Of a stretch of 64,000 nucleotides of DNA, positions 1 through 60,624 are shown in pieces. This stretch comes from Octopus sinensis (Eukaryota): positions 146,816,001-146,880,000 of the forward strand of contig NC_042998.1 in assembly GCF_006345805.1 (NCBI RefSeq). The letters are read 5' to 3'. The notes beneath the pieces were generated by a model, which had not been told where the DNA came from, did not search any database, and worked only from the letters and a program-made list of their open reading frames with translations. A program made the position numbers and the translations under genes. Every line of letters starts with the position of its first letter. The stretch's first letter is position 1.

Positions 1-159
1 TGAGGTTGACTTTGCCTTTCATCCTTTCATGATCGATTAAATAAGAACCAGTTACGCATTGGGGTTGATGTAATTGGCTTAATCCCTTTGTCTGTCCTTG
101 TTTGTCCCCTCTATGTTAAGCTCCTTTTGGGCAATAAAGGAATTAATTATTTTTATCAC

Positions 160-356
160 CTGTGCAGGTGGCACATAAAAAGCACCCACTACACTCACGG
201 AGTGGTTGGCGTTAGGAAGGGCATCAAGCTGTAGAAACATTGCCAGATAAGACTGGAGCCTGGGGCAGCCTTCTGGCTTCCCAGATCCCTGGTCGAACCG
301 TCCAACCCATGTTAGCATGGAGAACGGATGTTAAACGATGATGATGATGATGATGA
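160..356 (+). mobile_element. RTE 3'-tail copy (representative; others about 25600, 32720, 36070(-), 46395(-), 50880, 52080, 53140, 58900, 60045)
   Basis: GGCACATAAAAAGCACCCACTACACTC...GGAAGGGCATC..GCTGTAGAAAC...CCAACCCATG..AGCATGG...(GAT)n; same as the end of 41098-43651. Confidence 0.9.
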
Positions 357-5444: not shown

Positions 5445-5667
5445 TCTGATATATATATATATGTATGTATATTCCCCCCTTCCATTGCTAAGAGCATTTT
5501 TAAGCCAGCCCGTCAGTTCAACCTTCGCATATTCCCGTGTCAGGCCGAAGAACGAAATGTTCCCAAGATAAGAGTCTTTCTAATCTAATGTTGTGGTTGA
5601 GCTGTTTTGTTTATTTATTATTATTAGTATTAGTATTGTCCCTTTGATCCCCTGGTCGACAGTTTGC

Positions 5668-5701
<34 letters not shown>

Positions 5702-6054
5702 TTTCAGCTTCGCCTCGTATTGCATATTATTTCTCCATACAGGGTTTTTTTTTTTTTTTTTTTTTTCAATGGCGGCCCATTTTCGCGGGGTTCCACTGTT
5801 CCCTTCCCTTCTCTCTCTCTCTCTCCCTCTCTCACGTTGTCTGCCATTCCCCCCTTCCATTGCTAAAAGCATTTTTAAGCCAGCCCGTCAGTTCAACCTT
5901 CGCATATTCCCGTGTCAGGCCGAAGAACGAAATGTTCCCAAGATAAGAGTCTTTCTAATCTAATGTTGTGGTTGAGCTGTTTTGTTTATTTATTATTATT
6001 ATTACTATTATTAGTATTAGTATTGTCCCTTTGATCCCCTGGTCGACAGTTTGC

Positions 6055-6097
<43 letters not shown>

Positions 6098-7032
6098 TTT
6101 CAGCTTCGCCTCGTATTGCATATTATTTCTCCATACAGGGGTTTTTTTTTTTTTCAATGGCGGCCCATTTTCGCGGGGTTCCACTGTTCCCTTCCCTTCT
6201 CTCTCTCTCTCCCTCTCTCACGTCTGCCATTCCCCCCTTCCATTGCTAAAAGCATTTTTAAGCCAGCCCGTCAGTTCAACCTTCGCATATTCCCGGTGCA
6301 CCCGCCCTTGCCCACCCCCACCACCAATACCGGATATCTCTATATTTTTGCTCCATCTATACCGGATGTCGCTTCTCCCACCACCATTATAGGTGTCTAC
6401 TCTTCGAACCCCCCTCTTCAATACGCTATTTCACCATGCATTACCCCTCTCTTGATATCCTACGTTCTACTTGCCTAGAACCTGTCATCATTTCTCTGAA
6501 CCACCCCTCCCCACTGGTGCTCCCCTATATATTTCTGCCCCCCCCCCCCACATAAAAAAAAAGCACCATCCGAACGTGGCCGATGCCAGACCCCTCTGGC
6601 ACCTGTGCAGGTGGCACGTAAAAAACACCCACTACACTCGCGGAGTGGTTGTCGTTAGGAAGGGCATCCAGCTGTAGAAACACTGCCAGACTAGACTGGA
6701 GCCTGGGGCAGTCCCTAGCTCCCCAGACCCCGGTCGAAACCGTCCAACCCGTGCTAGCGCGGAAAACGGACGTTAAACGATGATGATGATGATGATGATA
6801 TATATATATATATATGTATGTATATTCCCCCCTTCCATTGCTAAGAGCATTTTTAAGCCAGCCCGTCAGTTCAACCTTCGCATATTCCCGTGTCAGGCCG
6901 AAGAACGAAATGTTCCCAAGATAAGAGTCTTTCTAATCTAATGTTGTGGTTGAGCTGTTTTGTTTATTTATTATTATTATTACTATTATTAGTATTAGTA
7001 TTGTCCCTTTGATCCCCTGGTCGACAGTTTGC

Positions 7033-7069
<37 letters not shown>

Positions 7070-7767
7070 TTTCAGCTTCGCCTCGTATTGCATATTATTT
7101 CTCCATACAGGGGTTTTTTTTTTTTTCAATGGCGGCCCATTTTCGCGGGGTTCCACTGTTCCCTTCCCTTCTCTCTCTCTCTCCCTCTCTCACGTTGTCT
7201 GCCATTCCCCCCTTCCATTGCTAAAAGCATTTTTAAGCCAGCCCGTCAGTTCAACCTTCGCATATTCCCGGTGCACCCGCCCTTGCCCACCCCCACCACC
7301 AATACCGGATATCTCTATATTTTTGCTCCATCTATACCGGATGTCGCTTCTCCCACCACCATTATAGGTGTCTACTCTTCGAACCCCCCTCTTCAATACG
7401 CTATTTCACCATGCATTACCCCTCTCTTGATATCCTACGTTCTACTTGCCTAGAACCTGTCATCATTTCTCTGAACCACCCCTCCCCACTGGTGCTCCCC
7501 TATATATTTCTGCCCCCCCCACATAAAAAAAAAAGCACCATCCGAACGTGGCCGATGCCAGACCCCTCTGGCACCTGTGCAGGTGGCACGTAAAAAACAC
7601 CCACTACACTCGCGGAGTGGTTGTCGTTAGGAAGGGCATCCAGCTGTAGAAACACTGCCAGACTAGACTGGAGCCTGGGGCAGTCCCTAGCTCCCCAGAC
7701 CCCGGTCGAAACCGTCCAACCCGTGCTAGCGCGGAAAACGGACGTTAAACGATGATGATGATGATGA

Positions 7768-7799
<32 letters not shown>
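5445..7799. repeat. Young higher-order tandem repeat H-X-H-X-H-Y-RTEtail / H-X-H-Y-RTEtail
   Basis: 65-bp H at 5472, 5847, 6230, 6825 and 7205; about 310-bp X three times; about 255-bp Y plus RTE tail twice; copies near-identical except for microsatellite lengths. Confidence 0.95.
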
Positions 7800-7803
<4 letters not shown>

Positions 7804-8697
7804 ATGTATGTTTGTGTGTGTGTTAAATAGGTGAAGATTATGGCCCTGTTCCTAACTCAAAGTACATCCTATAGTGGTGGTTTTTAACCTGGGCAAAAGT
7901 GCTCTCTTGGTGGTGTTTGGAGCACATAAAGAGACTTTATAGGAGACTTAGCATATTTAGTGGGAGTCATAATTTTTTTTGTACAAGTAAAATATTTAAA
8001 CCATAAAAAAACTTATATATTTGCAACACATTTTTTAAAAAAAAACATCTTAGTTGAGATAAGAATAGAATATTTTGCTATTAGTGAGCAGAAAATATGA
8101 CTTATGATCTGCTAATGGTCAATATGATTTCATTATATAAGGATTGCATCATACTCCACTGTCTACTTTGACAGTTTCATCATATCTTTTTCTTGTGTGT
8201 ACCAGAACCATATTCTAAAATGTCCTTTTTCTAAGACAATAGGGTGCAATTTGTTAAAATGGAATTTGGCTGCTATTTATTGCATGTCAGGCAACCATGA
8301 GGCAGCTCCTGTTGGTTATGATGGAATAAAATAAAAATTAAATATAATTTTTAGGTCTACTTAATTATATTGTTAAATAAAAAGAAAGTAAAAACTTGGT
8401 TTCAACTTCCTGTGTGTTTCAATTCTTGGAAAAAATGTAATGAAAGAGGCACTGGTATTATCTGAACTACTGGTCAGTTAGTCAGTGTGCTATGAATGTT
8501 GAATGGATGCACTCTGAGTTCAAATTCTGCTGAGGTCAGATAAGCATCCAGTCCAATATTCTTATCATTCTGACAGTCCACTAAGCAGTACTAAGCACAA
8601 AAAAACTGATAACCACTAATCAACAGTAAATGTCTGCTACTTCATTCTATTTGATAACAAGGTATAGTGAACATTAAAAATAAAAATTAAATGCGCC

Positions 8698-9189: not shown

Positions 9190-9816
9190 AGTCAGTGGAT
9201 TGGCAGAATGATAAAAATGTTGGACTGGATGCCTTGTGACATTTATCTCAGCTTTCTATATCTTGAGTTCAAATCCTGCCATGGCCTACTTGGTTGATAG
9301 AATTAATCAGTTGTCCAGTTGTGTTTGGCATCTTGGGTACATTTTGCAAGGTCCACACTATGACAAGCATTTGAGAATACTTTCTTCTCACCCTTCCTCA
9401 CATCAATCTCAAAGGCTCTCTAACAGGCCATGGGCGCTGCCTTTCCTCTTGACAAAAATACTAAAAAGAGAAACAAGAGAAAAATAACAAAAGAGTTAAA
9501 TATCAAAGGGAATCTTGGTCTTGCAAGCTGCTTAGTAATCTCACTAGTTCCATGGAGAAAGCACCTAGTACATGCTGCCAAGTGCTTGGCATTAAGGAGG
9601 GCATTGAACCATAGAAACCATACCCAACCAGACCGTAGAACATAATGCAGTCCAAAAACTTGGATTCCAACAAACTATCCAACCTGTGCTAGTATGGAAC
9701 GTGGATGTTAAATGAGAATGATGACTACAATGATGATAATGTATTGCTAACACTATAGTAATAACGATAATCTGAAAAACTATGTATTAAAGATTCTATC
9801 ATTTTATTTTTTTCAG

Positions 9817-10023: not shown

Positions 10024-11063
10024 GTAAGTCTATTTCTACTTTCCAATGTTTTTTTCCTTTTCCTTTCTTATATTTTACAAATAAAGCTGTCTGTCTGTTA
10101 CTCTGTTTTCCACAGGTCATAAGTCAAATATCATCATCATCATTATTATCATCATCCCTTGGAGAGTACTGTCTTGAGTCCTAGAAATCATAGGGCTAGT
10201 TACTTGGTTTCCATGACAAAGATCACAATGCACCCCCTGAATGGGATACTAGCCCATGCAGAATAACTCATTTACTGCTTAGTGGACTGGAGCAATGTAA
10301 AATTAAGTGTTTTGCTTAAGAACACAGCTCACTGCCCAGTCAGGAAATTGAAACTATAATCTTGTTTTCATGTGTGCAACATCTTAACCACTAGGCCACA
10401 TGCTTTCACTTAAATACCAAATACCCAGGGTTGAAATTTTTTCTCTGATATTAATTCAATGAGTGCACCTGTTTGACTTTGCAAACAACCTTAACCCTTT
10501 TTTTTAAATATGTTGCCTTTATTTGAATTAATTTTGAAAATAAGAAGTTATTAAAATAACTGACGTTTGGGTCATGAAATTTTCTTACAAATATTATTAT
10601 ATTTCTTGTTCTTATGAACAAGAAAGATATGCACCACCCCTTGCCAAGTTTTACTGATTCTAACTCTAACCCCTTGCTAGGCTTTAGAACTATAAACTCT
10701 CTTAAACTCCGTCTCATTACACCTTTTCTTTGTCAGGTTAACTTTTAGATGGGAGTTCAAAATGAGCACCAACAGCATCGACATTAGCTGTTAAGGAGAG
10801 CCTTTAAGGGATAAAGGGACTGCCCCTCTTCACACATAAAATAAGAATAAAAATATTCTGTAGGGTCTTAGTGGATTTTTGGAGATTTTTGCAGGTAAAA
10901 ATTATAATTACCATAATTTGTAATTTAGCATAAATCTCTTCTATTCCAATGTAAAATTTATATATCAATTACACTATAACTTTTGCAAGATGTTTCATAT
11001 ATATATATGTGTGTGTGTATTTTTTTTATTTTTTCATAACATTTCAGCCCAAAGGCTGAGGGC

Positions 11064-11108
<45 letters not shown>

Positions 11109-12588
11109 GTATGTATATATATTTGTATGCATTTATCATATGTACATACATGCATATACATACGTACACACACATACACACACACATATATGTATATATA
11201 CACACACCTTTACACTTACATACATATACTTAAATTTATTTATTTATTTCATTTGTTTGTTCATTTATAGTAACCAAATTATACACTGAGTGACATTTTC
11301 AATTTGCCAACTTGTATCTTTTGATACATGCACCTGAGACTTTAGCACTCTCATGGGTATGTTTTTGTAATATTTTTTTAAGTAGTACAAGTTCTGCTGT
11401 TTATTCCATGATTCTGACATTTCAGTGACTTAACTTTTCTGTCAATAAATATTACAAAGTCAGTAGTGTTGTGTTTCATCAAAACTTTTCTAGGAATTTC
11501 CAGAATTGTATTCCAATAAGTAACAGGTCTTTAGGATTATCATGTGTACAATTTCTACACATTATACAATATATTGGAAATGGACTTTAGTTATTCTTCA
11601 AACTAGCAGAAATACTGCTCTCTGGAAAGTTTTCTACTAGTTTCTAAATATTTACACTTTTGATTCTCATTTTGTGTAATTTCTCTCACATGTCACATCT
11701 AATTTTCCTTTCTATCTTAATTTGTTTAATAGTACTCACTTGCTCAGTAATTACCTACAGATGCGTGACCCCGCTCCCTCCACCAACTCTCTTTCCTCAT
11801 AAGTTTCAGAAAAATAGGTATTTTTTATGGAAATTTTCTACAATTTCTTTTCAGAAGGTGTAAATTACAATTATATCAGAATTTAATGTAAAAAAATTGA
11901 GACAGGTTGGATATTACATGCATTTTGACTTTGTTTCCTCATACATTTTAGTGATGTAGATTACAGTTTTGTTGAAAAAGAATTGCTTTTGAGACCAATG
12001 TAATTCCTGCTATTTCTAGCATACTAAATGACCATGTGCAGGGTGGGGTACTTTTGAGTTTATTTAAAAGTGAGAGATTAAAACTGATAAAATAATGAAA
12101 GAAATATGTATTCAATTGTACTCATTTTTCTACAAAGATTTCTTTCAGAGAATTTTTAGCAAAGGGTGAAATAGTCCTTAAAAGTTTATTCTTTTTTCAA
12201 CAGATGCAGGTGTGGCTGTGTGGTTAAGAAGCTTGCTTCACAACCATATGGTTCGGGATTCAGTCCCTCTGTGCGGCACCTTGGGCAAGTGTCTTCTACT
12301 ATAGCCTTGGGCTGACTAAATCCTTATTAGTGGATTTGTTAGACAGAAACAGAAAGAATATATATATATCTAATTATAAATGTATGTGTGTTTTTTTTCA
12401 GTGTTTACAAATGACACAGAAAAATAAATAAATAGTTACCAGGGAAGCAAAAATTCACACAAGTACCAAAGATGTAACAGCCTATTTATAAAGGTAGAAA
12501 CTCCAGGTTTAGGTGAAATGATTTTGTATAATATAGATAGATAAATATATAAATGGAGTTAAACGCAGGTGTTATTCAAATCTTTTTA

Positions 12589-12676
12589 CTTCCGACATAT
12601 GTTTCAAAGAAAACATTGGTATTATTCCAGAAGGAATAAAATGGTGTAAAACAATGCAATCTTCTCATCAGGGAAA
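12589..12676 (-). ncRNA. Type I hammerhead ribozyme motif, complete core
   Basis: Minus strand: UUUCC-CUGAUGA-G AAGA..CAUUG[loop]CAAUG..UCUU U-GAAA-CAUAUG-UC|GGAAG. Stem I UUUCC/GGAAG, palindromic stem III ACAUAUGU, GUC site. Folded by eye. Confidence 0.75.
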
Positions 12677-12751
12677 GAAAGAAACCAAACATATCAATAA
12701 GACATTTTAACAGAATCATCACATGTCTTATTGATATGTTTGGTTTCTTTT

Positions 12752-12839
12752 TTTCCTTGATGAGAAGATTGCATTGTTTTACACCATTTTATTCCTTCTG
12801 GAATTATATCAGTGTTTTCTTTGAAACATATGTTGGAAG
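12752..12839 (+). ncRNA. Hammerhead ribozyme, inverted partner copy with C3U and C17U
   Basis: UUUCC-UUGAUGA-GAAGA...UCUUU-GAAA-CAUAUG-UU|GGAAG; reverse-complement twin of 12589-12676. Confidence 0.55.
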
Positions 12840-13250
12840 TAAAAAAATTTGAAGAGCACTTGCGTTTAACTCCACTTATTTATTTATGTATGTATATATT
12901 TTATTCTTTCACTTATTTCAGTCATTTGACTGCAGCCATGCTGGAGTACTGTCTTTAGTTGAGCAAATCAACCCCAGGACTCATTCTTTGTAAGCCTAAT
13001 ATTTATTCTGTTGGTCTCTTTTTCTGAACTGCTAAGTTATGGGTATGTAAGCACACCAGCATCGGTTGCCAGGCAATGTTTGGGGGACAAACACAGACAC
13101 ACAAACATATACACATGCATACATACAATACATACATACATACATACGTACGTACATATATGTATATATATGAATATATATATATGTATATATATATATA
13201 TTTATATATGTATATATATTTATATGTATATATGTATGTATGTATATATA

Positions 13251-14191: not shown

Positions 14192-14398
14192 GGTTGGCCA
14201 AAAGTCACCTGAAAGTAAATCAAAACCATTTAATTCCAAGATTTATTTATGTTTAACAACTGAATGAATTTAATAAAAGCATCTAAATATAAAATTTCAT
14301 GAGAATTATTCAAACTGAAGTCCTTCTTGAGCCAGTACAGAATTACAGATAGTATTTATGGAATTTTGGACTCCTGTCGGGTGACTTTTGACCAACCC

Positions 14399-14400
<2 letters not shown>
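14189..14400. mobile_element. Tc1/mariner-type MITE inserted in (TA)n
   Basis: 21-bp TIR CAGGGTTGGCCAAAAGTCACC / GGTGACTTTTGACCAACCCTA, flanked by TA runs. Confidence 0.85.
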
Positions 14401-14439
<39 letters not shown>

Positions 14440-14702
14440 ATGGTATTGTTAAAATACCGTTATGAGTGGCAAGTGAATTATCAACCGTACAGGCAAATTA
14501 ATAAAATATATATATACAATATTAGATATGTACATGTATACACAAGGGCATTGTATGAGCACCTACATCGCTAAAAAATAGAAGTCAAAAATACTTCTGT
14601 ACGACTGAATTGTCACAAATCTATTACAGACATGATAGGAAAAAAATTCAGTGAACAATGATGTCTTACCTCTGCTAGGTTAGAACAAGTAATGCTGCTC
14701 AA

Positions 14703-14749: not shown

Positions 14750-15098
14750 GTCTGCCAGATAATTACTACTAAAATTTTCTTCCACCATGCCTGCAAAAGT
14801 TCGTATGAAGTGACCAATCACTATAGGAACAAACGAAATGTGTGAAATAATTTATAAATAAATATAGGGGTGGTATTTTAAAATACTATCACGAGTGGCA
14901 AATTAATTAAATATATACATACAACATTAGATACAAAATTATGAGGAATGACCACTAAAGTGGACACCTAATATGATAAACATAGACGTCAAATTGTCAT
15001 TACCTTGAAGAATGTGTTCTTAAGAAAAATCTCAGCAAAACGTCAAAATGTAAAACTGAGCAAGACAAATGAAAATATACGAAATAAAAAACAATTAC

Positions 15099-15172
15099 CT
15101 ATGTACCAATGGTTTCACTTGTTAATATCTACATATGCAAACATGCAGATATCTGCAAGATTGTCAGTGTAG
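15099..15172 (-). ncRNA. Hammerhead ribozyme, degenerate inverted partner (G8A)
   Basis: CUACA-CUGACAA-UCUUG...CAAGU-GAAA-CCAUUGG-UA-CAUAG; core and stem I differences from the 15658 copy are CpG-type transitions. Confidence 0.5.
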
Positions 15173-15657
15173 TCTGTCACTTACAAAACACAATTTTCAG
15201 AACTAGATACAGAACATTCAATCGAAATCGAGTATGTATAAAGTTCTACAAATTATATTTGGGTGTATTTTTCAAATGTCTTCACTTTGGCATGTGGAGG
15301 CTGGATTTGACGTCTATGTTTAGCATATTAGGTGTCCACTTTAGTGGTCATTCCTTTTAATTTTGTATGTAACACAACTTTTAATCTTTGGATTTTTTAA
15401 ATATGCTAAGCCACTGGTTTTAATTGATTAATATCAATTTCTACCCTTCTTATTTAATTTAAAATAAAAAAATGTTCTCTAACCGGTGAATTGGCTGCTG
15501 AAATTTATCAAATGCAGAGTAATTTCCGGCCTCAGTGCACCAAAGTGAAGACATTTGAAAAATACACCCAAATATAATTTGTAGAACCTTATACATGCTC
15601 AATTTCGGTTGAGCGTTCTGTATCTAGTTTTGGAAATTGTATTTTGTAAGTGACAGA

Positions 15658-15731
15658 CTATGCTGACGATCTTGCAGATATATGCATGTTTGCATATGTA
15701 AATATTAACAAGTGAAACCATTGGTACGTAG
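15658..15731 (+). ncRNA. Type I hammerhead ribozyme motif, complete core, sense to EXT2 intron
   Basis: CUAUG-CUGACGA-U CUUG[inner hairpin AUAUGC/GCAUAU]CAAG U-GAAA-CCAUUGG-UA|CGUAG. Stem I CUAUG/CGUAG, stem III ACCAUUGGU, GUA site; non-canonical U.U at 10.1/11.1. Confidence 0.65.
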
Positions 15732-16059
15732 GTAATTGTTTTTTATTTCACATATTTTCATTTGTCTTGCTCATTTTGCATTTTGGCGTTTTGCTGAGAC
15801 TTTTCTTGAGAACACATTCTTTGTGGCAATGGCAATTTGACATCTATGTTTAGCATATTAAGTGTCCACTTTAGTGGTCATTCCTCTTAATTTTGTATGT
15901 AACACAATTTTTAATCTTTGGATTTTTAAAAATATGCTAAGCCACTGATTTTAATTGATTTATATCAATTTCTACTCTTATTATTTAATTTACAATATTA
16001 GATATGTACATATATACACAAGGGCACTACCTGGTGTGGCATTCAATCAAATAATAATA

Positions 16060-16640
16060 TAAATAACATATATATGCACAAATGCATATATGGGTACAAG
16101 ACATCACCAACAGTAAATAACATGAAATACGAAAACAAATGAGTTCAATATGCAAACAACATGAGAAACAAAAAGAAAACAGGACAAGTAACACAAAGAA
16201 CGACCCTTCATCAGTTGTTGGCTGTTTATCTACTCCTCAGCGCTCGAAATGGGGAGTAGATAGACAGCCAACAACGAATTAAGAGGCGTTCTTTGTGTTA
16301 CTTGTCCTGTTACCCATTTGCTTCTCATTGTTTGCGTATTGAACTAATTTGTTTTCATATTTCATGTTGTTTACTGTTGGCAACATCCTGTTCCCATACA
16401 TGCATATGTGATGTTGGTTTTATATATATATATATATCTGCCTTCGAAACATGGAGTAAATGAAACAGAGACAACTGAAGAAGGGGAATATTCTTTATGT
16501 TGCATGTCTTGTTTCTCTGGTTGTTTTTTACATTGTTCCAAAAAATAGTTCGTTTCTATGTTCTTGTTTTTATGTTTTTGTTTCTCATTGTGTTCTACAT
16601 TTTTTTGATGTCCTGTACCCATAGATGCATGTATATATAC
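16060..16640. repeat. Fold-back (arms 16107-16236 and 16253-16380) plus a related outward partial copy
   Basis: CCAACAGTAAA...CTACTCC / GGAGTAG...TTTACTGTTGG; related copy 16440-16640 with CTGAAGAAGGGG. Confidence 0.85.
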
Positions 16641-16712
16641 ATATATATGTAGGTATGTACATATATGTATGTATATATGCATATATTTATATATTAAATA
16701 TATTATTATATA

Positions 16713-19849: not shown

Positions 19850-22800
19850 TAAAGATGGCTGATAAAGAAACCATCATAATGTTCAACAAAGGAACACACA
19901 CCTTGCCAAAAAAAATTGAGAATGAGGAAAGAATTGGGAATATGAATATTGAATGGCCTAAATTTAATGATGTCACCGAGGCAAAAAAATTTTCGCCTCT
20001 AAGCAACATCAAAACTTGTAGTGTCGACAATGAAAACAACAACAGCAGCAGTGACATCAACAAAAACAACAACAGTAATAACAACAATACAAAAGAAATG
20101 AAACATAAAAACACAAATACTGCCTCTGAGTCTTTTGTATCTGTCGGGGGAAATATGGAAAGTTTCCACATAGATAAAGAAGAATTAAAATTGTAAAGGG
20201 AGATGGGAGAAGGATAGCGCTAAACCCTCCATCCGACGTGATAGAAAATGTCATAAGCTGCATGGTAACATACCGTTGTATCGGAGTCAAGTCTCAGCAG
20301 ATGTAAAATGCGAAGTACAAAAATATCTTGGGCATGTGTAGAAACAAAGGACCCACATCACCTGAGGGAAGAAGTTTGGAACTATTGAGGTGAGTTTTGG
20401 GACGGAAGAAGAAGCTAGATTTAATTCTGCAACCACTTTGAGGAATGACAACTTTTCCTTAATTCCCAGCTATTGCAGCCAACACCTTGCTAAGATTAGG
20501 GTGCTGATGTACCACCAGAAATATCCATTACCTGGTTAGTGGTGGCCATCTTAGCAGGTTTAGACGAAGATGAAGTCATAATATTGGAGGTCAAGAAACT
20601 ACCTGAGCAAAACTGGTTAGGTATAGGTATGGAACTGATCTTGCAATGCATGCAAGGCCATATGGACCAGCTGCCTGATCTAATCAATCTCCCAGATGGT
20701 ACTCACCTGTCAGTGTTCATGAAAGGTAGAAAGCTAAGATGCTACATATGTGGATGTGTAAATTACTTAAAGGCTTTCTGCCCTGAAACAAGGAAAAATA
20801 AAGTCCCACTGCTGCCAACATTACAAACAACCACAATTGCAAAATCATAAGCAAGTGCTCAAGACTCCTATGCTCAAATATGTTATCATGCCAGATTTGT
20901 TTGGCAGCCTCTTGGCAGATATCTACAGTAATTGGCAGCAGAACGGGAGAATTCCTAGTACTGTTAGCCAGGGTGTGGTATTACTACTGACAAAAGACTC
21001 TGATAATGGGGATCTGCTAGTGAATTTTTGGCCCATAACTCTGCTAAACATAGTTTAAGATTTTGGCCAAGGTGTTAGTGTAAAGGTTGGTGCTTGTCAT
21101 TGGTAGTCTTGTGTGTGTGTGTGGGGGGGGGGCACAAACATGCGCAATCCTGAGCAGGTCTATTCTCAACAACCTCCACCTTATGCAATACATTGCTTTG
21201 GTGGGGCCCTGATCAATTTATTTAGAACAGTCAAAAGCTTTTGATAGTGTAGACCATCGCTACTTGGAAGCCGTCATTAAAGCAGCTGGTTTCGGACCTG
21301 TTTTCAGAGGCTGGATTGCTGCAATGCACAGCGGCACTTGCTCAGTAGTCTAAGTAAATGACCACTTATCGGAACCATTTAGTATCGCATGTTCGGTCCA
21401 TCAGAGCTGTCCGCTGTTACTTCTTCTGTCTGTGCTGGCTCTTGAGCTACTGCTGTGGAAATTGGAGCAATTAAGAGGCCTCCCTTTCGAAATTGGAAGG
21501 ACAGTGTCTGCATACATGGACGTCACTGTCATGGTGTCGGACGCCTCAGAAGTGGAGTAGGTCAGCTCCATTCTAAAGGAATATGAGTTGGTTGTAGGGG
21601 CTAACATAAATGCCGACAAGTCAGTGGGATTGCGATGGGCACCTGGAGAGGCAGATCAGTGCTGTCAGATGGCATCATTGGTTGCTGGACTGACAGACCA
21701 GTTAAACTGCTCGGGGTTGGTCCTGACCGCCAGGTGGATAAGAATTGGGAAGTGGTGATGAACAGGGTGACCTCTCTTACCTAGAAATGGGCAGAGAAGA
21801 AGTTGTCCGTGAAAGGTCAGGCAGAGGTGGCAAATGCCTACATTGCTTCTGTCATTATTTATTGTCTGACCATCGTGTCTTGCCCCAGTTACTGCTTGAT
21901 TAGATTGGAGTATATCCTGTTTGTTTTCTTGTGGAAGGGACACGTTCCAAGGGTCAGGTGGTTAGTCTGCTGCCAACTTCCTTTGTGTGGCGGCTAAGGC
22001 ATACCATGCCTTTTAATACACAGACATGCACTCATGTCGCGCCACCTGCAGCAATTTCTAGAAGGTGAACGTGTGTGGGCTTTGTTTGTGAGACATGCCT
22101 TTCTGCAGCTTGTCTCCTTGTTGGAGCTGCAGTCCTGAGTAAAGGATAGGCCAAGATTGGGCTCCTGGCACTTAGAATGTCATCAGGCACTCCTGGCCTC
22201 TACAAGTTGAACAAATAGGATCAGTGAATGTTCCACTTTAGATATTTATAGAAGATTAGTAGTGGGGAAGTGTGATGACATCCTTGGAGAGACTCTAGGC
22301 ATTGACACAGATGAACTGGCAAGTCTATTCCGGAAGACTTTCTGGTCTGGGACTATTATGGATAATTTCCAGATGTCTTTGGCCTGCCAGTGCTACCAGG
22401 GGGCACTACCGGTTCGAGATAAACTCTATAGGCACAGATGTACTGTCAGACAGGCTTGTCTAAAGTGCTTGCAGAGCAATGAAACCTTTCTGCATACGCT
22501 TGTTAAGTGTCTGGGCATTGTTGACTTGTAGGGTTATGTTGAACAGCTACTATCACATGTAGGACAGATCCATGTGTCAGCCAAGTCCATAATGATGATT
22601 GCCATACTGCCCTTCTTTAATCAGGCTGGCAAGGCAGTTTTCCTTTGTCTGGTGGCTGTGGCAAAAGAGGTTATCTGGTGGACAAGGCTGAAAGGAATGA
22701 GGACAGAAACATTCCTCTTTGGTAAAGTCCTCATCGACTTTTTCGAGTTTCACCTGAAAAGGTAAGTGCGGGTTGAGAGGGAGTTGCTGTTCTCAAGTGA

Positions 22801-41097: not shown

Positions 41098-43651
41098 GTT
41101 GGAGGTTCCTACGAGACAAGATCTACTGACTAGATCTGTGGCTGGTGCAAAGTTCCCTCTTGACCTAAGGTAACGTGGTGGTGGAACAATGTAGTTGATA
41201 GGGCTATTAGGGAAAAGAAACAGGCATGGAAGGACTGGAAGTGTGGTGGTAGCAGGGAACTGTATCAGATTACCAGAAGGGAAGCTAGGAAACAGGTTTA
41301 CTTAGCCAGAGGGGAAGCATATCAGAAAAAATTTGCCAATGATCTACATCGTGAGGACCAGAGACTTGAAGTGTTTCATATTGCAAGACAGTTTGTGAGA
41401 GAGAATCTTGATGTCATACGAGAGAAATGTGTCTGCATGGATGATGGCTCACTTGCATTTAATGATGCTGCAAAAAGAGAGACTTGAAGACACCACTATG
41501 AAATGTTGCTAAATGAAGAGAAGGAATGGGAAAAAGAGTCTACCAAATGTTGACCTAAAAGAGGGACCAGCTAATAGAATTGGCAGTACCTTGGTAAATA
41601 AAGCAATTAAGAGTATGAAGACAGGGAAAGCCCCCAGCCCATCAGGTATCACTGCAGAGATGCTTAAAATATCTGGTGCTGTAGGCTATAGTCAACCAGA
41701 TGATACATGAAGGAGTCATACTCAGTGACTAGTGTAGCAGCACCTTTGTCAACTGCTACAAAGGTAAAGGAGATGCATTAGATAGGAATAATTACAGAGG
41801 TTTCAAATTGTTGGATCAAGTGATGAAAGTCATGAAGAGGGTCATAGCTCAACTAATTATGAAGAGAGTTAGTTTAGATTAGATGCAGTTTGGGTTTGTG
41901 CCAGGGAGATGCACGACTGATGTTATATTTCTGGTAAGACAGCTGCAGGAGAAATTCTTAGCCAAAAATAAACCTCTGTACCTGGCTTTCATTGACACAG
42001 AGAAAACTTTTGATAGGGTCCCCTGATCCCTTATCTGGTGGTCAATGCAGAAACTAGGGACAGTGATACTGGTTGGTGAGAGCTGTACAAGCCATGCACA
42101 GAGATGCTGTCACGTGAGGGTTGGCAATAAGTATAGTAAAGAATTAAGTAGAAGTAGGAGTTCACCAAGGATCAGTCCTCAGCCCCCTCCTATTCATGAT
42201 AGTCCTCCAGGCAATAACAGAGGAATTCAAGACAGACTGCTTCTGGGAACTCTTTCATGCTGATGACCTTGTTCTGATAGCTGAATCACTACCAGAACTA
42301 GAGAAAAAGTTCCAGGAGTGGAAGCAATGTCTAGAATTGAAGGGCCTTAAAGTCAATCTAGCAAAAACCAAAGTCTTAGTAGGTAGGAAGGCAGACAAAT
42401 TATAAACCCCTTCAGGTAGATAGCCCTGCTTGATCTGTAGAAAAGGCAGGCGTAGGTACATAAGATGTACGTGGTGTAAGCTATGGACACATAAGTTGTG
42501 CAGCAATATCAAAAGAAAGCTAACTGGGAAGATAGTTTTTGTGTGTTGCAGATGCACAGGTGCAATAAACACTGAAGATGTACAGAAAACAGATTCCATC
42601 ACATCCCAGGGAAGAAAACTAGTAGTTGATGGCTTCCGTTACCTAGTTGACCAAATCAGTAGCAGGAGTGAATGTTCTGAGAGCATTGCTGCTAGAATAA
42701 AATTAGCCTGGGCAAAGTTCAGAGAGCTCCTACCTCTGCTGGTAACTAAGGGCCTCTCACTCAGAGTGAAAGGTAGACTGTATGATGTGTCTGTGTGAAC
42801 AGCCATGCTACACAACAGTGAAACATGGGCTGTGACTGCTTAGGACATGCGTAGGCTTGAAAGAAATGTAGTTTGCTCCGCTGGATGTGTAATGTCAGTG
42901 TGCTTACACGACAAAGTGTAAACGCCCTGAGAGAAAAGTTAGACATAAGAAGCATCAGATGTAGTGTGCATGAGAGATGACTGCACTACTATGGTCATGT
43001 GCTGCATATGGATGAGGACAGCTGTGTGAAGAAGTGTAACACCCAAACAGTGGAGGGAACCTGTGGAAGAGGTAGACCCAGGAAGACATGGGATTAGGTG
43101 GTGAAGCACGACCTTTAAATGTTAGGCCTCACAGAGGCAATAAGTGACTGAGACCTTTGGAGATATGCTGTGCTTGAGAAGACCCAGTAAGCCAAGTGAG
43201 ATCATAGCCATGACCGATGTCAGTGATGCATAACTGGTCTGTTTAAAAGCACCCTTCAATCGTTAGGCAATATGCTATTCTTGAGAAGACCTGTTGAGTC
43301 AAATGAAATCATAGTTGTGGCCAATGTCAGTACTGCCTGACTGGCACCTGTACCGGTGGCATGTAAAAAGCACCATTCGAGTGTGGCTGATGCCAGTGCT
43401 GGTGGCATATAAAAGCACCATTTGATCGTGGTTGATGCCAGTGCCATCTGACCAGCCCCTATGCTGTGGCATGTAAAAAGCACCCACTACATTCTCAGAA
43501 TGGTTGGCATTAGGAAGGGCATCCAGCTGTAGAAACCTTGCCAAATCAGACTGGGGTTTTGTGCAGCCTCCTGGTTTGCCAGTCCTCAGTCAAACCATCC
43601 AACCCATGCCAGCATGGAAAGTGGACATTAAATGATGATGATGATGATGAT
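41098..43651 (+). mobile_element. 5'-truncated RTE-clade LINE (ORF2 pseudogene plus 3' UTR ending in (GAT)n)
   Basis: TWWWNNVVDRAIREKK, KTGKAPSPSGITAEMLK, ELFHADDLVLIAES, GLKVNLAKTK; stops and frameshifts; (GAT)n tail. Confidence 0.92.
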
Positions 43652-45638: not shown

Positions 45639-48214
45639 GTTATTATTCATCATCTAAATTCTTATTTTATTTTATTTTGTTTTGTTTTTCTGTTGTTGTT
45701 TATTAATTAAGTTTTGAATTATTTTGCAAGAATTGAGATCTGAACTGTTGAAACCAATATTTGTTATATTGGAAAGGGTCATAAGTAATAAAGCCTATAC
45801 GCACCCTCACCAATTGTTGCTTGTCTATATTTCACTTCTGTATTTCAAAGTAGTTGATGTTTGTTTATGTCCTCAAAAATATTTTTCACTGCAAATGTTT
45901 TGAAAAAGTAAGAGAAATGAAATATACTCTGTTAAGTGTGTCTGTAGACTTTATCACTTCCCAAATATAACATCAGTTCAGTGTTTTTTTTTTTAATTCC
46001 ATATAGTTCTCTACTTGGCCTTAGCTATCATGATTCAGTAAATCTATTCATTTTGCCATCTTGTTGTTTGTGACCCTTTTTATTTGTCATAACCACTTAG
46101 TGGATTTTCTGATAATAGCTGACAGCTGAATGGCAGACCAAACCTTGTCAGTTTATATAGGTTGAACAAAATCTTCAGTATCCTTGCTAATGCACTAAAA
46201 CAGGAACACAACAGTGTCAGTGTGATGAGAATCAAACCTCCTAAATTCTCTTTAAATATATATTCATATTTATTTCATGAAGTTTTGACATTTTTGCCAT
46301 ACAACTGCAGCCTGGTTACTGACACAGTTGCGCAATAAAAAATTTGACACCTCATGGAATAAAAATAAATTTAAAGAGAATTTAATAGCTTTGTTTTAGG
46401 TAGGGCATTCAGCCATAGAAACCATGCCAAACTTGACACTGGAGCACAATGCATTCCTTGGACCCATCTGATCCTGTTGAACTGTCCACTCTATGCCAAC
46501 ACGGAACATCGATGTTAAATGATAATGATGATGATGTATTATTAAACAGCTAGAATAGATTCTTCTACAATGTAGCTGCTTCAGTTTCAACACAGTCTCA
46601 GATCAAATCATTTGCTAAACAACTACAACTGTGAAATTTTTATGTTTTGCTTTTCTCTATTAATTACTACAACATCTTTTTCTTCTCTTAACTCTTTTTA
46701 TGTTTTCCTCCCAACTAACTACCCTTATATTTACTTTGTTTTGGCCTTACAGACCACATTTATATGTATTTTATGTTAATTCTTCCCACTCTGTTGCATA
46801 TTTGCTGGTAATTAATTGGCATTTTAGTTGTACATACTTCTGAAAATGTAATACCTGGATACATCGCAAGTGTTATAACATGATGTTTTTGGGTGTTTCA
46901 TGTATTACAGCATGTAATTTCATTTAGGTGATCCAACCTATTTTAATCAAATCTACACCTGTATCCAAGTGGCACTCTACTGATCTCACTGGTCACAAAT
47001 ATTTGTTATATTTTCTAAAGTCTGTCATGAGACCTAAGGTGTATAAGGTTGGAGCTTAACCCCATTTGTCTAGATTACATCACTTCCTCCTGAACAGAAT
47101 GCTGGTCTGTCAAAGGTTAACTTTTCAGCTATTATTTGAACTCATTTACAGCTGAATGCAGTGGAACAATAGGAAATGAAGTGTTTTGCACACCGCCCAG
47201 TCCAGGAATCAAAAATTATGATCTTATGATTGTAAGTGCAACACCCTAACCATTAGGCCACACACCTTCAGATTTCTTGGCTACAACCATTCAAATGCTT
47301 TCTCTGTGACATCTACATTGTTCTTGATGGCTCCTCTGTTCATTTCTGCTCAGGATTTAACCCTTTGGCATTCAGATTACTCTGTCAAGTGCAGTTCTTA
47401 TTTATTCACATTGTTTTTGATCATGTATTAGCTCTTAGCTTTGTGATTTCAATGATATGATTGAATATTTTTAGAATGACATTGTAGGAGAGATGTGAGA
47501 GGCCAGATCTGGTTGGTTTGATATAAAACAAGTTGAATATTTTGGTTGGATATGGTTGATTTAAATATGCGAAAGATTTAATAAGGAAAATGATTATTTT
47601 TTTCCACTTTTTAGTTAATTACTACCTAATTGGTCAAAAGTTCAAGTCATGTCATTGCCATTACAGTGTGACATTAGACAAAGGACATTGTTCTTCTTGA
47701 TTCCTTGATTTGGCCAACCCTGCTGAAGAATAATTAATGGTTTAATCTCTCTAATTACATATATCAAGGTGTCAGCCACATTTTGCACCAATTCTTGGAC
47801 TACACCTGAATTTACAGGACCAAATTATGTTGGAAACCTGAGAATACTTGTTAACTACGGCATTGTTTTAGTTCTGGTTTCTATAGATTTAAAAATACCA
47901 GATGTGAAGCTATGTCTGAACATACAGACACACATGTGCACCCACCCACACACACACACATGTGCACCCCCTCCCACACACTGGCAATGTATTAAACTGG
48001 TATTATTAGCATATGTGCAGTTAAGTATTTATCAAGAATTTTGGGGGTCATGCTGGAGCAGTGTTTTTATTAAAAAGGAAAATAAATCTCAAATGTAATT
48101 ATATTGTCAATGAAATATATACATATATATAGTTCAAATTTACAGAAAACAAAAGAAAAAGACAGGTGTAGGAACAACAAGCAGGTGTATTAGTTTAACA
48201 CTGGGGGGGGGAGT

Positions 48215-53109: not shown

Positions 53110-53144
<35 letters not shown>

Positions 53145-53819
53145 CGCCTGACTGGCGCTCATGCCAGTGGCGCGTAAAAGCACCCACTACACTCTCGGAG
53201 TGGTTGGCATTAGGAAGGGCATCCAGCTGTAGAAACTCTGCCAGATCAGATTGGAGCCTGGTGCAGCCATCTGGTTCACCAGTCCTCAGTCAAATCGTCC
53301 AACCCATGCTAGCATGGAAAGCAGACATTAGACGATGATGATGATGATGATATATATATATACACACACACATACATGTATATCTATGTGTGTGTGTTTT
53401 TGTGCCTGTGTTTCCCACCACCCCCACCCCACCACTTGACAACCAGTGTTGGTCTGTTTACATCCCTGTAACTTAGCAATTTGTTAAAAGAGAATAAGTA
53501 CCAAGCTTTAAAAAAATGGAAGTTCTGGGGTTGGTTTGTATGACTAAAATCTCTTCAAGGCGTTGCTCCAGCATTACTACAGTCTAATGACTGAAACAAG
53601 TAAAAGACAAAAAGAAAAAGATAAGCTTTAAAGTAAATTAAAATCAGGTCCTTTTATAAACATTGATCCAAAATGGAAATAAATGTATACCCCTGAGACT
53701 TCAGCCGGGTATCTGTCATAATCCAGATGACTGTGCTAACCTTTATACCAATGTGATCAGATACATTCCTTCTATTCAAATTAGGCCCATAAAGTATTAA
53801 ATTAGTTTAACTTATACAG

Positions 53820-60045: not shown

Positions 60046-60273
60046 TCAGTGGCACATAAAAAGCACCCACTACACTCTAGGTATGGTTGGTATTAGAAAG
60101 GGCATTCAGCTGTAGAAATCATGCCAAATCAGATTTGGACCTGGTGCAACTCCCCAGCTTACCAGTTTTCAGTCAAACTGTCCAACCTGTGCCAGCATTG
60201 AAAATGGACTTTAAATGATAATGATATATTGTTTATTGCAATAATGAAATATATTTATTTTTCTTCTTTTCAG

Positions 60274-60624
60274 TTTTACAACTTCCTCTATACTTATTCA
60301 ATGCCAGGCAACATCAAAACCTGGGTCGATGAACACATGAACTGTGAAGATATTGCATTTAATTTCTTGATTACAAACACCACAGGTAAAGCACCAATAA
60401 AGGTCACACCACGCAAAAAGTTCAAGTGTCCAAAATGTCTTAACAACAGTTTTCTGTCTTTAGATTTAAATCACATGGTTGAACGTACAGAATGCATCAA
60501 CAGGTTTGTAGATATATATGGCACTGTTGCTCTCCGAACTGTGGAATTCCGGGCAGATCCAGTGCTTTATAAAGATAACTTCCCTCCTATGCTGAAGAAA
60601 TTTAATGATATTGGAAGTTTATGA
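60274..60624 (+). CDS. EXT2: Exostosin-2 terminal coding exon (to TGA)
   Basis: tttcag|[35 protein letters not shown]...[12 protein letters not shown]...[24 protein letters not shown]; the C-terminus ...IGSL is as in EXT2. Confidence 0.97.

What the first reader, a model, noticed from the sequence alone, without database searches (positions are those of the whole stretch)
15658..15731. Sense-strand intronic hammerhead with intact core that could cut EXT2 pre-mRNA after A15726
Seen: all core nucleotides are present on the EXT2 sense strand with a GUA triplet. Comparison with the inverted twin reconstructs a perfect ancestral stem I (CUACG/CGUAG), which supports a real structure rather than chance. 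The U.U at 10.1/11.1 is shared by both copies, so it is a family trait rather than decay. Inference: a non-canonical natural HHR variant.
Basis: partly seen in the sequence, partly recalled or inferred. Interest (0 to 1): 0.8.

Follow-up and report, generated by a model that had tools for sequence, protein, structure and literature searches.

The report
Hammerhead-like motif in decayed intronic retroelement
A sequence that fits the hammerhead self-cleaving RNA pattern really is present in an EXT2 intron, but it sits in an old, decaying mobile-element insertion, fails every curated hammerhead model, and should be locked in a long hairpin with its inverted copy, so it is unlikely to cut the EXT2 transcript.

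Summary
The motif is real. Window 15658-15731(+) reads CUAUG|CUGACGA|U-CUUG..CAAG-U|GAAA|CC-AUU-GG|U|A|CGUAG. It is the only match in the window to a type I hammerhead descriptor. Shuffles give about 0.004-0.006 matches per window, or 0.03-0.04 with looser rules.

It lies on the sense strand in a ~35 kb EXT2 intron.

No Rfam hammerhead model matches it, even at E<=10.

Both copies belong to one 1,058-bp retroelement insertion: an inverted truncated copy, a partial tandem copy and a full 525-bp unit, flanked by a 13-bp target duplication. The shared U.U is therefore not shown to be a family trait.

The twin carries G8->A. Divergence inside the motif (8.1%) matches the flanks (9.5%).

U10.1-U11.1 hammerheads are already published.

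In the pre-mRNA, 72 of 74 motif bases pair with the upstream twin in a ~358-bp hairpin.

Helix III is unstable as a monomer, and there is no second sense copy to form a dimer.

Best reading (about 0.5): a decaying hammerhead-type motif carried by a retrozyme/Penelope-like element, a neutral passenger here. A chance look-alike is nearly as likely (about 0.4). Active cleavage of EXT2 pre-mRNA is about 0.05. Interest is low.

The parts
15658..15731 (+). Hammerhead-like type I motif. Helix I 15658-15662/15727-15731; CUGACGA 15663-15669; U10.1 15670; helix II 15671-15712; U11.1 15713; GAAA 15714-15717; helix III 15717-15725 (loop AUU); A17 15726, with the putative cleavage after it.
   Evidence: Sequence. 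Sole descriptor hit in the window. Shuffle expectation 0.004-0.006 per window. No Rfam hammerhead match.
15099..15172 (-). Inverted twin of the motif. The core is broken (CUGACAA, G8->A, leaving C3.A8 unpaired) and helix I has two mismatches.
14934..15305 (-). Inverted, truncated copy of the retroelement unit. The repeat finder gives the arm as 14927-15305; its outer bases overlap the left target-site duplication.
   Evidence: Inverted repeats I1/I4, 89-90% complementary. blastn 91.2% over 364 nt. Alignment.
15305..15466 (+). 5'-truncated direct copy holding only the last ~162 nt of the unit. It sits head-to-tail with the full unit and does not include the motif.
   Evidence: Direct repeats D11/D12, spacing 530-531. 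blastn 93.3% over 163 nt.
15467..15991 (+). Full-length unit of the retroelement, 525 bp here (start-to-start repeat spacing 530-531), 31% G+C. It carries the motif on its sense strand. The + strand RNA is more structured than shuffles.
   Evidence: MFE of the 531-nt stretch 15467-15997 is -124.6, z=-3.4 (+ strand), against z=-1.9 (- strand).
14921..14933 (+). Left target-site duplication, ACAACATTAGATA.
15992..16004 (+). Right target-site duplication, ACAATATTAGATA.
14492..14550 (+). Uninterrupted paralogue of the insertion target ('empty site'). It matches the joined flanks of the insertion without gaps.
   Evidence: 55/59 identities, no gaps, E=8e-23.
14927..15902 (+). Predicted long RNA hairpin in the EXT2 pre-mRNA, formed by the two inverted arms (14927-15305 and 15525-15902, 219-nt loop). 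It buries the motif.
   Evidence: MFE of 14900-15950 is -585 kcal/mol, with 358 inter-arm pairs and 72 of 74 motif bases paired to the twin. The same pairing appears in the nascent transcript ending at 15740.

Best explanation
Window 14934-15991 is one old insertion of a non-autonomous retroelement. It consists of an inverted truncated copy, a 5'-truncated direct copy and a full unit of about 525 bp, and it is flanked by a 13-bp target-site duplication. It lies in a ~35 kb intron of EXT2.

The sense strand of the unit carries a type I hammerhead-like motif of the weak 'minimal' style: a 5-bp helix I, a long helix II, and a 3-bp near-palindromic helix III. This is the style known from Penelope-like elements and animal non-LTR retrozymes.

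I infer that the motif is most likely the inherited processing ribozyme of that element, now decaying. In the source element such a ribozyme would cut multimeric element transcripts into unit lengths.

At this locus it is a neutral passenger. The twin is already inactivated (G8->A). The + copy keeps its core only because about 5% divergence per lineage has not yet hit it. In the EXT2 pre-mRNA the motif should be zipped into a ~358-bp duplex with its upstream inverted twin rather than fold into a ribozyme. No meaningful cleavage after A15726 is expected.

Shown: the motif, the insertion architecture, the intronic sense position, the lack of constraint, and the predicted hairpin.
Inferred: hammerhead ancestry, the class of element, and inactivity in vivo.
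For: - The motif is present and is the only descriptor hit. Shuffle expectation is 0.004-0.006 per window.
- Single insertion: the joined flanks align without gaps, 55/59, to an intact paralogous site, and the 13-bp duplication ACAAYATTAGATA bounds the insertion.
- The layout of an inverted truncated copy next to a partial tandem is the layout described for Penelope-like element insertions (PMC8557442).
- Low G+C (31%), unit size and a duplication longer than 4 bp fit animal non-LTR retrozymes (PMC7229834; 51-972 bp consensus lengths and about 44% intronic copies in Xenopus in bioRxiv 10.64898/2026.07.22.740005).
- A short helix I, long helix II, short palindromic helix III and low activity are traits of Penelope-element hammerheads (PMC4209133).
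- U10.1-U11.1 occurs in natural hammerheads (PMC3088659).
- The unit's + strand RNA is unusually structured: z=-3.4, against -1.9 for the other strand.
- Passenger status: divergence is 6/74 inside and 29/304 outside the motif, Fisher p=0.83, and the twin has G8->A.
- Sequestration: 72 of 74 motif bases pair to the twin, dG -585 kcal/mol.
- The hammerhead fold scores -12.1 against an MFE of -14.2, holding 0.4% of the ensemble.
- Helix III is unfolded alone but gives -10.9 kcal/mol in trans. Only one sense copy exists.
Against: - No Rfam hammerhead model matches, even at E<=10 in a 131-nt search.
- G10.1-C11.1, described as highly conserved in Penelope-element hammerheads, is absent.
- Helix II is 42 nt long.
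- There is no other canonical or minimal hammerhead in the window.
- No Penelope-type ORF was seen. The RT fragments I scanned in the window match only the generic RVT_1 and zf-RVT families, which I read as non-LTR type.
- An A-rich run at the tandem junction could equally mean a LINE-mobilised SINE-like element with template switching or twin priming. For such an element an internal active ribozyme would be self-destructive.
- No further family copies could be retrieved, so hammerhead ancestry rests on one template sequence.
- Equilibrium folding ignores co-transcriptional kinetics.
Confidence: 0.5

Rival explanations
1. Chance look-alike. The retroelement never had a ribozyme. An A/T-rich quasi-palindrome (ATATGCAT-type low complexity) supplies 'helix II', and a CUGANGA and a GAAA happen to flank it, with short complementary runs providing helices I and III.
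For: - The descriptor was fitted after the fact. Looser versions reach 0.03-0.04 per window.
- Scaling even 0.006 per window gives roughly 90 matches per Gb (my extrapolation).
- Perreault et al. warn that consensus matches arise by chance and reject hits with a mispair next to the core.
- No Rfam hit.
- The hammerhead fold is not the MFE, and the motif's folding z-score is only -0.58.
- Similar TATGCATA palindromes are scattered nearby (family D6).
- No constraint is detectable.
- Both copies reflect one template.
Against: - The motif is the only hit in 128 kb of searched strand, and the reversed-sequence control gives 0.
- It sits on the sense strand of an element whose insertion layout is the known habitat of animal type I hammerheads.
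- CpG restoration improves helix I to five Watson-Crick pairs and keeps the core intact.
- The one mismatch next to the core is the best-tolerated one.
Confidence: 0.4
2. One reading: an active, non-canonical intronic hammerhead that cleaves EXT2 pre-mRNA after A15726 and thereby affects EXT2 expression.
For: - The core is intact with a GUA site on the sense strand.
- The position is intronic.
- U.U at 10.1/11.1 is compatible with activity in other hammerheads.
- Local folding during transcription could in principle precede capture by the twin.
Against: - The upstream complementary arm is already transcribed, and the duplex would have nucleated about 130 nt before the motif emerges. 72 of 74 bases are paired to the twin even in the nascent transcript.
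- Helix III is unstable alone, and there is no second sense copy for a dimer.
- A 5-bp helix I and a very long helix II leave little room for the loop-loop contacts needed at physiological Mg2+ (background).
- Hammerheads of this style in Penelope-like elements showed little or no activity as monomers.
- There is no sign of selection.
- From my own knowledge, not checked here: ribozyme cuts inside introns can leave splicing largely intact.
Confidence: 0.05
3. The RNA-level feature that matters here is the long inverted repeat itself. In the pre-mRNA it forms a ~358-bp imperfect double-stranded RNA. That would be a natural substrate for RNA editing or small-RNA processing, and the hammerhead-like motif would be irrelevant. 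This is compatible with the best explanation and with the chance rival.
For: Arms 14927-15305 and 15525-15902 are 89-90% complementary with a 219-nt loop. The predicted fold has 358 inter-arm pairs at -585 kcal/mol.
Against: This is an equilibrium prediction only. No expression, editing or small-RNA data are available. Such inverted transposon pairs are common in introns and usually have no effect.
Confidence: 0.3

Closest known systems
Minimal type I hammerheads of Penelope-like elements (Cervera & de la Pena 2014, PMC4209133)
   Same: - Type I topology.
- Short helix I (4-5 bp), longer than usual helix II, and a very short near-palindromic helix III that only becomes stable in a dimer.
- Weak or undetectable monomer activity.
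- Carried by retroelements whose insertions show partial tandems with an adjacent inverted truncated copy (PMC8557442).
   Different: - Lacks the conserved G10.1-C11.1 pair. Instead of the single extra base between A9 and 10.1, it has U.U followed by C-G.
- Helix II is far longer (4 bp, an internal loop, then a 9-13 bp hairpin).
- No RT/GIY-YIG ORF and no defined pLTR here.
- The motif lies mid-unit rather than in a terminal repeat.
Animal non-LTR retrozymes (Cervera & de la Pena 2020, PMC7229834; Li et al. 2026 preprint)
   Same: - A small, low-G+C, non-coding unit in head-to-tail arrangement with a type I hammerhead on the sense strand.
- Target duplication longer than 4 bp.
- Structured unit RNA.
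- Often found in introns.
   Different: - Only about 1.3 direct units, plus an inverted copy.
- The unit (~525 bp) is above the 170-400 nt typical of invertebrates.
- Copy number, circular RNA and self-cleavage are all unknown.
- The ribozyme does not match curated models.
Natural hammerheads with a U10.1-U11.1 mismatch (Perreault et al. 2011, PMC3088659)
   Same: Stem II starts with U.U next to an otherwise consensus core.
   Different: That paper's variant candidates were backed by comparative alignments and, for several variants, cleavage assays; its text as read here does not say whether the U.U examples themselves were assayed. This candidate has neither alignments nor assays.
Conserved intronic hammerheads of amniotes (Rfam HH9/HH10); named from my own knowledge
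   Same: Sense-strand hammerhead inside an intron of a protein-coding gene.
   Different: Those are single-copy, deeply conserved and match covariance models. This one is a transposon passenger with no detectable constraint and no model match.

Membership tests
Hammerhead ribozyme (any type) | Consensus core: C3 U4 G5 A6 N7 G8 A9, G12 A13 A14, A15.1-U16.1, H17 | tested here: met
   The + copy has CUGACGA ... GAAA ... U-A. The twin fails, with G8->A and no compensating U3.
Hammerhead ribozyme (any type) | Three helices with standard pairs directly next to the core (1.1-2.1, 10.1-11.1, 15.1-16.1). This is the filter used by Perreault et al. 2011. | tested here: not met
   1.1-2.1 is C-G and 15.1-16.1 is A-U, but 10.1-11.1 is U.U. 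U.U is a documented tolerated exception, so this failure weakens membership but does not exclude it.
Hammerhead ribozyme (any type) | Score at or above the gathering threshold of an Rfam hammerhead covariance model | tested here: not met
   No hammerhead family was reported at gathering over the whole window, at E<=10 over 4 kb, or at E<=10 over 131 nt. The 42-nt helix II insertion may account for part of the penalty.
Hammerhead ribozyme (any type) | Conservation of the core and compensatory changes in the helices across homologues | tested here: inconclusive
   Only two copies exist, both from one insertion. Divergence is equal inside and outside the motif. No homologues were found in the reachable collections.
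Hammerhead ribozyme (any type) | Site-specific self-cleavage 3' of H17 | not testable with these tools
   This needs in vitro transcription or RNA-end mapping. Predictions are unfavourable: the hammerhead fold holds 0.4% of the ensemble, helix III is unfolded alone, and the motif is sequestered by the twin.
Penelope-like-element minimal hammerhead | Helix I of 4-5 bp and a short, palindromic helix III / loop 3 | tested here: met
   Helix I is 5 bp. ACCAUUGGU is self-complementary apart from the central U, and the trans duplex gives -10.9 kcal/mol. Traits as listed in PMC4209133.
Penelope-like-element minimal hammerhead | Conserved G10.1-C11.1, with one unpaired base between A9 and 10.1 | tested here: not met
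   The sequence is A9-U-CUUG...CAAG-U-G12.
Penelope-like-element minimal hammerhead | Located in the terminal repeats of an element that encodes RT plus GIY-YIG endonuclease | tested here: not met
   The insertion has no ORF above 83 aa, and that ORF has no Pfam hit. The RT fragments elsewhere in the window match RVT_1 and zf-RVT. A non-autonomous derivative remains possible.
Animal non-LTR retrozyme | Head-to-tail tandem units of a few hundred bp, low G+C, target duplication >4 bp | tested here: inconclusive
   There are 1.3 direct units at a spacing of 530-531 bp, plus an inverted copy. G+C is 31%. The duplication is 13 bp. This is too few units to call an array, and LINE-type template switching or twin priming could give the same layout.
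Animal non-LTR retrozyme | Many genomic copies, expressed as linear and circular unit-length RNAs that start and end at the ribozyme site | not testable with these tools
The best EXT2 relative in the protein collection is only 83% identical.

The most novel reading that the evidence does not exclude
The ~525-bp unit is a previously undescribed mollusc retrozyme family. Its hammerhead uses a U10.1.U11.1 junction and an unusually long helix II yet is catalytically competent. In EXT2, the inverted twin acts as a built-in antisense clamp, so that the ribozyme cuts the pre-mRNA only when the hairpin is unwound or edited. That would be a conditional intronic ribozyme.
Probability: 0.04. Interest if true: 0.6.

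Novelty: new member of a known kind. Interest (0 to 1): 0.2.

Why it matters
If the motif is a true hammerhead by descent, it adds one more decayed example to a well-known class: type I hammerheads carried by animal retroelements, many of which sit in introns. The U.U junction has been described before. It would matter only if the family proved abundant and active in this lineage, or if cleavage of EXT2 pre-mRNA were shown, and nothing here points that way.

The practical lesson is methodological. Two copies inside one insertion are not independent evidence for a 'family trait'. An inverted twin also argues against ribozyme folding in the host transcript, not for it.

Tried and rejected
- **Rfam.** I ran it at gathering over the whole window, then at E<=10 over 4 kb and over 131 nt. 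No hammerhead family was reported. The listed hits (mir-297, mir-1277, twister-P3 and others) are low-complexity or sub-threshold noise.
- **More copies inside the window.** blastn with word size 7 and nhmmer, using both the unit and the motif as queries, found only the two known copies plus the partial tail.
- **Family copies through spurious ORFs.** The 83-aa antisense ORF across the twin found no candidate in the 5.8-billion protein set.
- **Exact DNA scans.** A 25-mer from the unit gave nothing in the metagenome collection. A 20-mer from the motif gave one unrelated coding-looking hit, L001, and nothing in viral contigs.
- **Species identification and related loci.** The best EXT2 last-exon relative is 83% identical, on an unnamed ENA contig. 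The nearest named relative is a bivalve at 73%. Its 20-kb locus L002 shares only exons with the window and has no copy of the unit.
- **tRNA-derived SINE head.** ARAGORN found none.
- **Canonical Penelope-type minimal hammerheads elsewhere in the window.** None were found.
- **DNA-transposon / MITE reading.** Rejected: the termini of the insertion are not inverted repeats of each other (by inspection of the junction sequences). From my own knowledge, a 13-bp duplication is also long for a DNA transposon.
- **Two independent insertions for the two copies.** Rejected as less parsimonious. The inverted copy has no duplication of its own, all components show similar divergence (7-9.5%), and there is a single pair of flanking duplications.

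Full report
**1. The observation**

Window 15658-15731(+) reads CUAUG CUGACGA U CUUG [34 nt] CAAG U GAAA CC AUU GG U A CGUAG. In hammerhead numbering:
- Helix I: 15658-15662 paired with 15727-15731 (four Watson-Crick pairs and one U-G).
- C3-A9: 15663-15669.
- U10.1 at 15670 and U11.1 at 15713.
- G12-A15.1: 15714-15717.
- Helix III: A-U, C-G, C-G closed by AUU.
- U16.1 at 15725 and A17 at 15726.

A descriptor I wrote for exactly this anatomy finds this site and nothing else on either strand of the window. If 10.1/11.1 must pair, there is no hit at all.

Dinucleotide-preserving shuffles give these expectations:
- 0.006 hits per window for the descriptor as found (19 hits in 3,166 shuffles).
- 0.004 if 10.1/11.1 must be a pair or U.U.
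- 0.03-0.04 if the stems are loosened slightly.

The reversed-sequence control gives 0. Scaling the per-window rate (my extrapolation) gives roughly 90 chance matches per Gb, so it would not be rare genome-wide. The descriptor was also fitted after the fact.

**2. Gene context**

The last coding exon (60202-60621, +) matches human exostosin-2 at E=1e-47, against 6e-17 for exostosin-1. Exon peptides at about 9.8-10.0 kb, 45.4-45.65 kb and 50.3-50.5 kb align contiguously to human EXT2 residues 147-315. With the GT and AG sites at 10024 and 45445, the candidate lies on the sense strand in an intron of about 35 kb.

The species is not in the reachable collections. The best relative of the last exon is 83% identical, on an unnamed ENA contig. 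The nearest named relative is a bivalve at 73%. I therefore describe the source only as mollusc-like.

**3. What the surrounding DNA is**

The motif has an inverted twin at 15099-15172(-). The twin is part of a much larger repeat structure:
- Arms 14927-15305 and 15525-15902 are 89-90% complementary.
- 15305-15466 is a direct copy of 15835-15997, at a spacing of 530-531 bp.

The layout is therefore an inverted truncated copy, then the last ~162 nt of a unit, then a full unit.

The block is bounded by ACAACATTAGATA (14921-14933) and ACAATATTAGATA (15992-16004). When the block and one of these 13-mers are removed, the joined flanks align without a gap, 55/59, to an intact paralogous sequence at 14492-14550. 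That is the signature of one insertion with a 13-bp target-site duplication, meaning target-primed reverse transcription of a non-coding element.

Other properties of the element:
- G+C is 31%.
- No ORF in it exceeds 83 aa, and that ORF has no Pfam match.
- It has no tRNA-like head.
- The components differ from each other by 7-9.5%, and the duplication by 1 in 13. This fits a single old event.

The layout of a partial tandem with an adjacent inverted truncated copy is the one drawn for Penelope-like element insertions (PMC8557442). Small low-G+C tandem units with longer target duplications define animal non-LTR retrozymes (PMC7229834). A 2026 preprint reports consensus lengths of 51-972 bp and about 44% of Xenopus copies overlapping introns.

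The unit's + strand RNA folds better than shuffles (z=-3.4, 0 of 100 shuffles as good), and better than its complement (z=-1.9).

Against a Penelope/retrozyme assignment:
- An A-rich run sits at the tandem junction.
- The RT fragments I scanned in the window match only the generic RVT_1 and zf-RVT families, which I read as non-LTR type.
- A LINE-mobilised SINE-like element with template switching and twin priming could give the same picture.

**4.

Both copies come from one insertion, so they report on a single template molecule. Their shared U.U is not evidence of a family trait.

What the twin does allow is a reconstruction. The helix I and G8 differences are CpG-type changes, or hits on both bases of one CpG. 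The inserted sequence therefore probably read CUACG CUGACGA ... GGUA CGUAG, with five Watson-Crick pairs in helix I.

Since insertion the twin has lost G8 (CUGACAA, leaving C3.A8 unpaired) and two helix I pairs. Divergence inside the 74-nt motif is 6/74, against 29/304 in the rest of the arm (Fisher p=0.83). There is no sign of purifying selection. At about 5% change per lineage, my own estimate is that an unhit core in one of two copies is roughly an even bet (0.95^13).

One oddity remains. Positions 15682 and 15701 are A.A in the + copy, while their counterparts in the twin form C-G. With only two sequences this cannot be interpreted.

**5. Is it a hammerhead?**

For:
- The full consensus core is present.
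- The topology is type I.
- It shares the style of hammerheads in Penelope-like elements: helix I of 4-5 bp, a long helix II, and a short palindromic helix III that needs a dimer (PMC4209133).
- ACCAUUGGU does not fold alone but gives -10.9 kcal/mol in trans.
- The U.U junction is not disqualifying. Perreault et al. found natural hammerheads whose stem II starts with U10.1-U11.1, and noted that U.U supports more activity than any other mismatch (PMC3088659).

Against:
- No Rfam hammerhead model reports a match at gathering or at E<=10, even when only 131 nt are searched.
- The G10.1-C11.1 pair that Cervera and de la Pena list as a consistent feature is absent.
- Helix II is 42 nt long.
- The hammerhead fold (-12.1 kcal/mol) is not the minimum (-14.2) and holds 0.4% of the ensemble. 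The motif's folding z-score is only -0.58.
- No other hammerhead, canonical or minimal, occurs in the window.

I could not obtain further copies of the element, so the decisive covariation test is open. Weighing these, I put hammerhead ancestry at about one half and a chance look-alike at about 0.4.

**6. Would it cut EXT2 pre-mRNA?**

This is the weakest part of the finding. In the sense transcript the complementary arm is made about 500 nt before the motif. The duplex between the arms can nucleate at 15305/15525, about 130 nt before the motif emerges.

Folding 14900-15950 gives a hairpin with 358 inter-arm pairs at -585 kcal/mol, in which 72 of the 74 motif bases pair with the twin. The same is true for a nascent transcript ending at 15740. 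Against that, the ribozyme fold offers about -12 kcal/mol and an unstable helix III.

The dimer route used by this style of hammerhead needs a second sense copy, and there is none. Hammerheads of this style in Penelope-like elements showed no detectable monomer activity and only low activity as dimers in vitro.

I rate real cleavage after A15726 at about 5%. These are equilibrium predictions, and co-transcriptional kinetics could differ. The more plausible RNA-level consequence of this locus is the long double-stranded hairpin itself.

**7. Comparison with known systems and novelty**

The closest known things are:
- Minimal type I hammerheads of Penelope-like elements.
- Animal non-LTR retrozymes.
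- The published U10.1-U11.1 variants.
- More distantly, the conserved intronic hammerheads of amniotes.

Membership of the hammerhead family is not established. The core is met, the adjacent-pair rule and the model score are not met, covariation is inconclusive, and cleavage is untestable here. At best this is one more decayed member of a known kind. Neither the U.U junction nor an intronic location is new.

**8. Verdict**

Interest is low (0.2).

The decisive tests are a genome-wide alignment of the unit, in vitro cleavage with and without the inverted arm, and RNA-end mapping at 15726|15727.

Noticed in passing
window 12531-12705 and 12723-12897: Near-perfect inverted repeat with 175-nt arms, 92% complementary and a 17-nt spacer, in the same EXT2 intron. 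It looks like a foldback or MITE-like element and would form another long RNA hairpin.
   Followed up: no
window 16077-16410: Nested inverted repeats: 16077-16159/16328-16410 at 86%, and 16161-16239/16250-16328 at 85%. They lie just downstream of the insertion.
   Followed up: no
window 15682/15701 versus 15148/15129: The two partners of one helix II pair both differ between the copies: A.A in the + copy and C-G in the twin. This looks compensatory, but with only two sequences it could equally reflect template switching in a quasi-palindrome.
   Followed up: partly
window 15846-15918 (-): Weak type-P3 twister match at 17.7 bits against a gathering score of 39.9, E=6.9, inside the tail of the same retroelement. 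Treated as noise.
   Followed up: no
window 14389-14446 and 16616-16693: Sub-threshold matches to mir-297, mir-1277, mir-3149 and mir-466 on both strands. They are (TA)n/(TG)n palindromic low complexity, not microRNA genes.
   Followed up: partly
window 42148-42402 (+) and 22211-22528 (+): Fragments of reverse transcriptase inside the EXT2 introns: RVT_1 at E=9e-14 and zf-RVT at E=4e-6, which I read as non-LTR type. No Penelope-type endonuclease was seen among the ORFs scanned.
   Followed up: partly
window 82-330, 6528-6932, 7503-7856, 9595-9786, 43302-43589, 46399-46602, 53113-53457 (mostly - strand): A SINE-like repeat recurs at least seven times. In most copies one translation frame carries a histidine run and/or a shared '[20 protein letters not shown]'-like stretch. 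It is the dominant interspersed repeat of the window.
   Followed up: no
window 5584-7450: Three copies of another repeat with an internal (TTA)n microsatellite, starting at about 5584, 5959 and 6937, judged from near-identical ORF translations.
   Followed up: no
window 14380-14560 versus 14840-14933 plus 16005-16030: The target of the insertion is itself a member of a local repeat family. An intact copy lies only about 400 bp upstream and served as the 'empty site'.
   Followed up: yes
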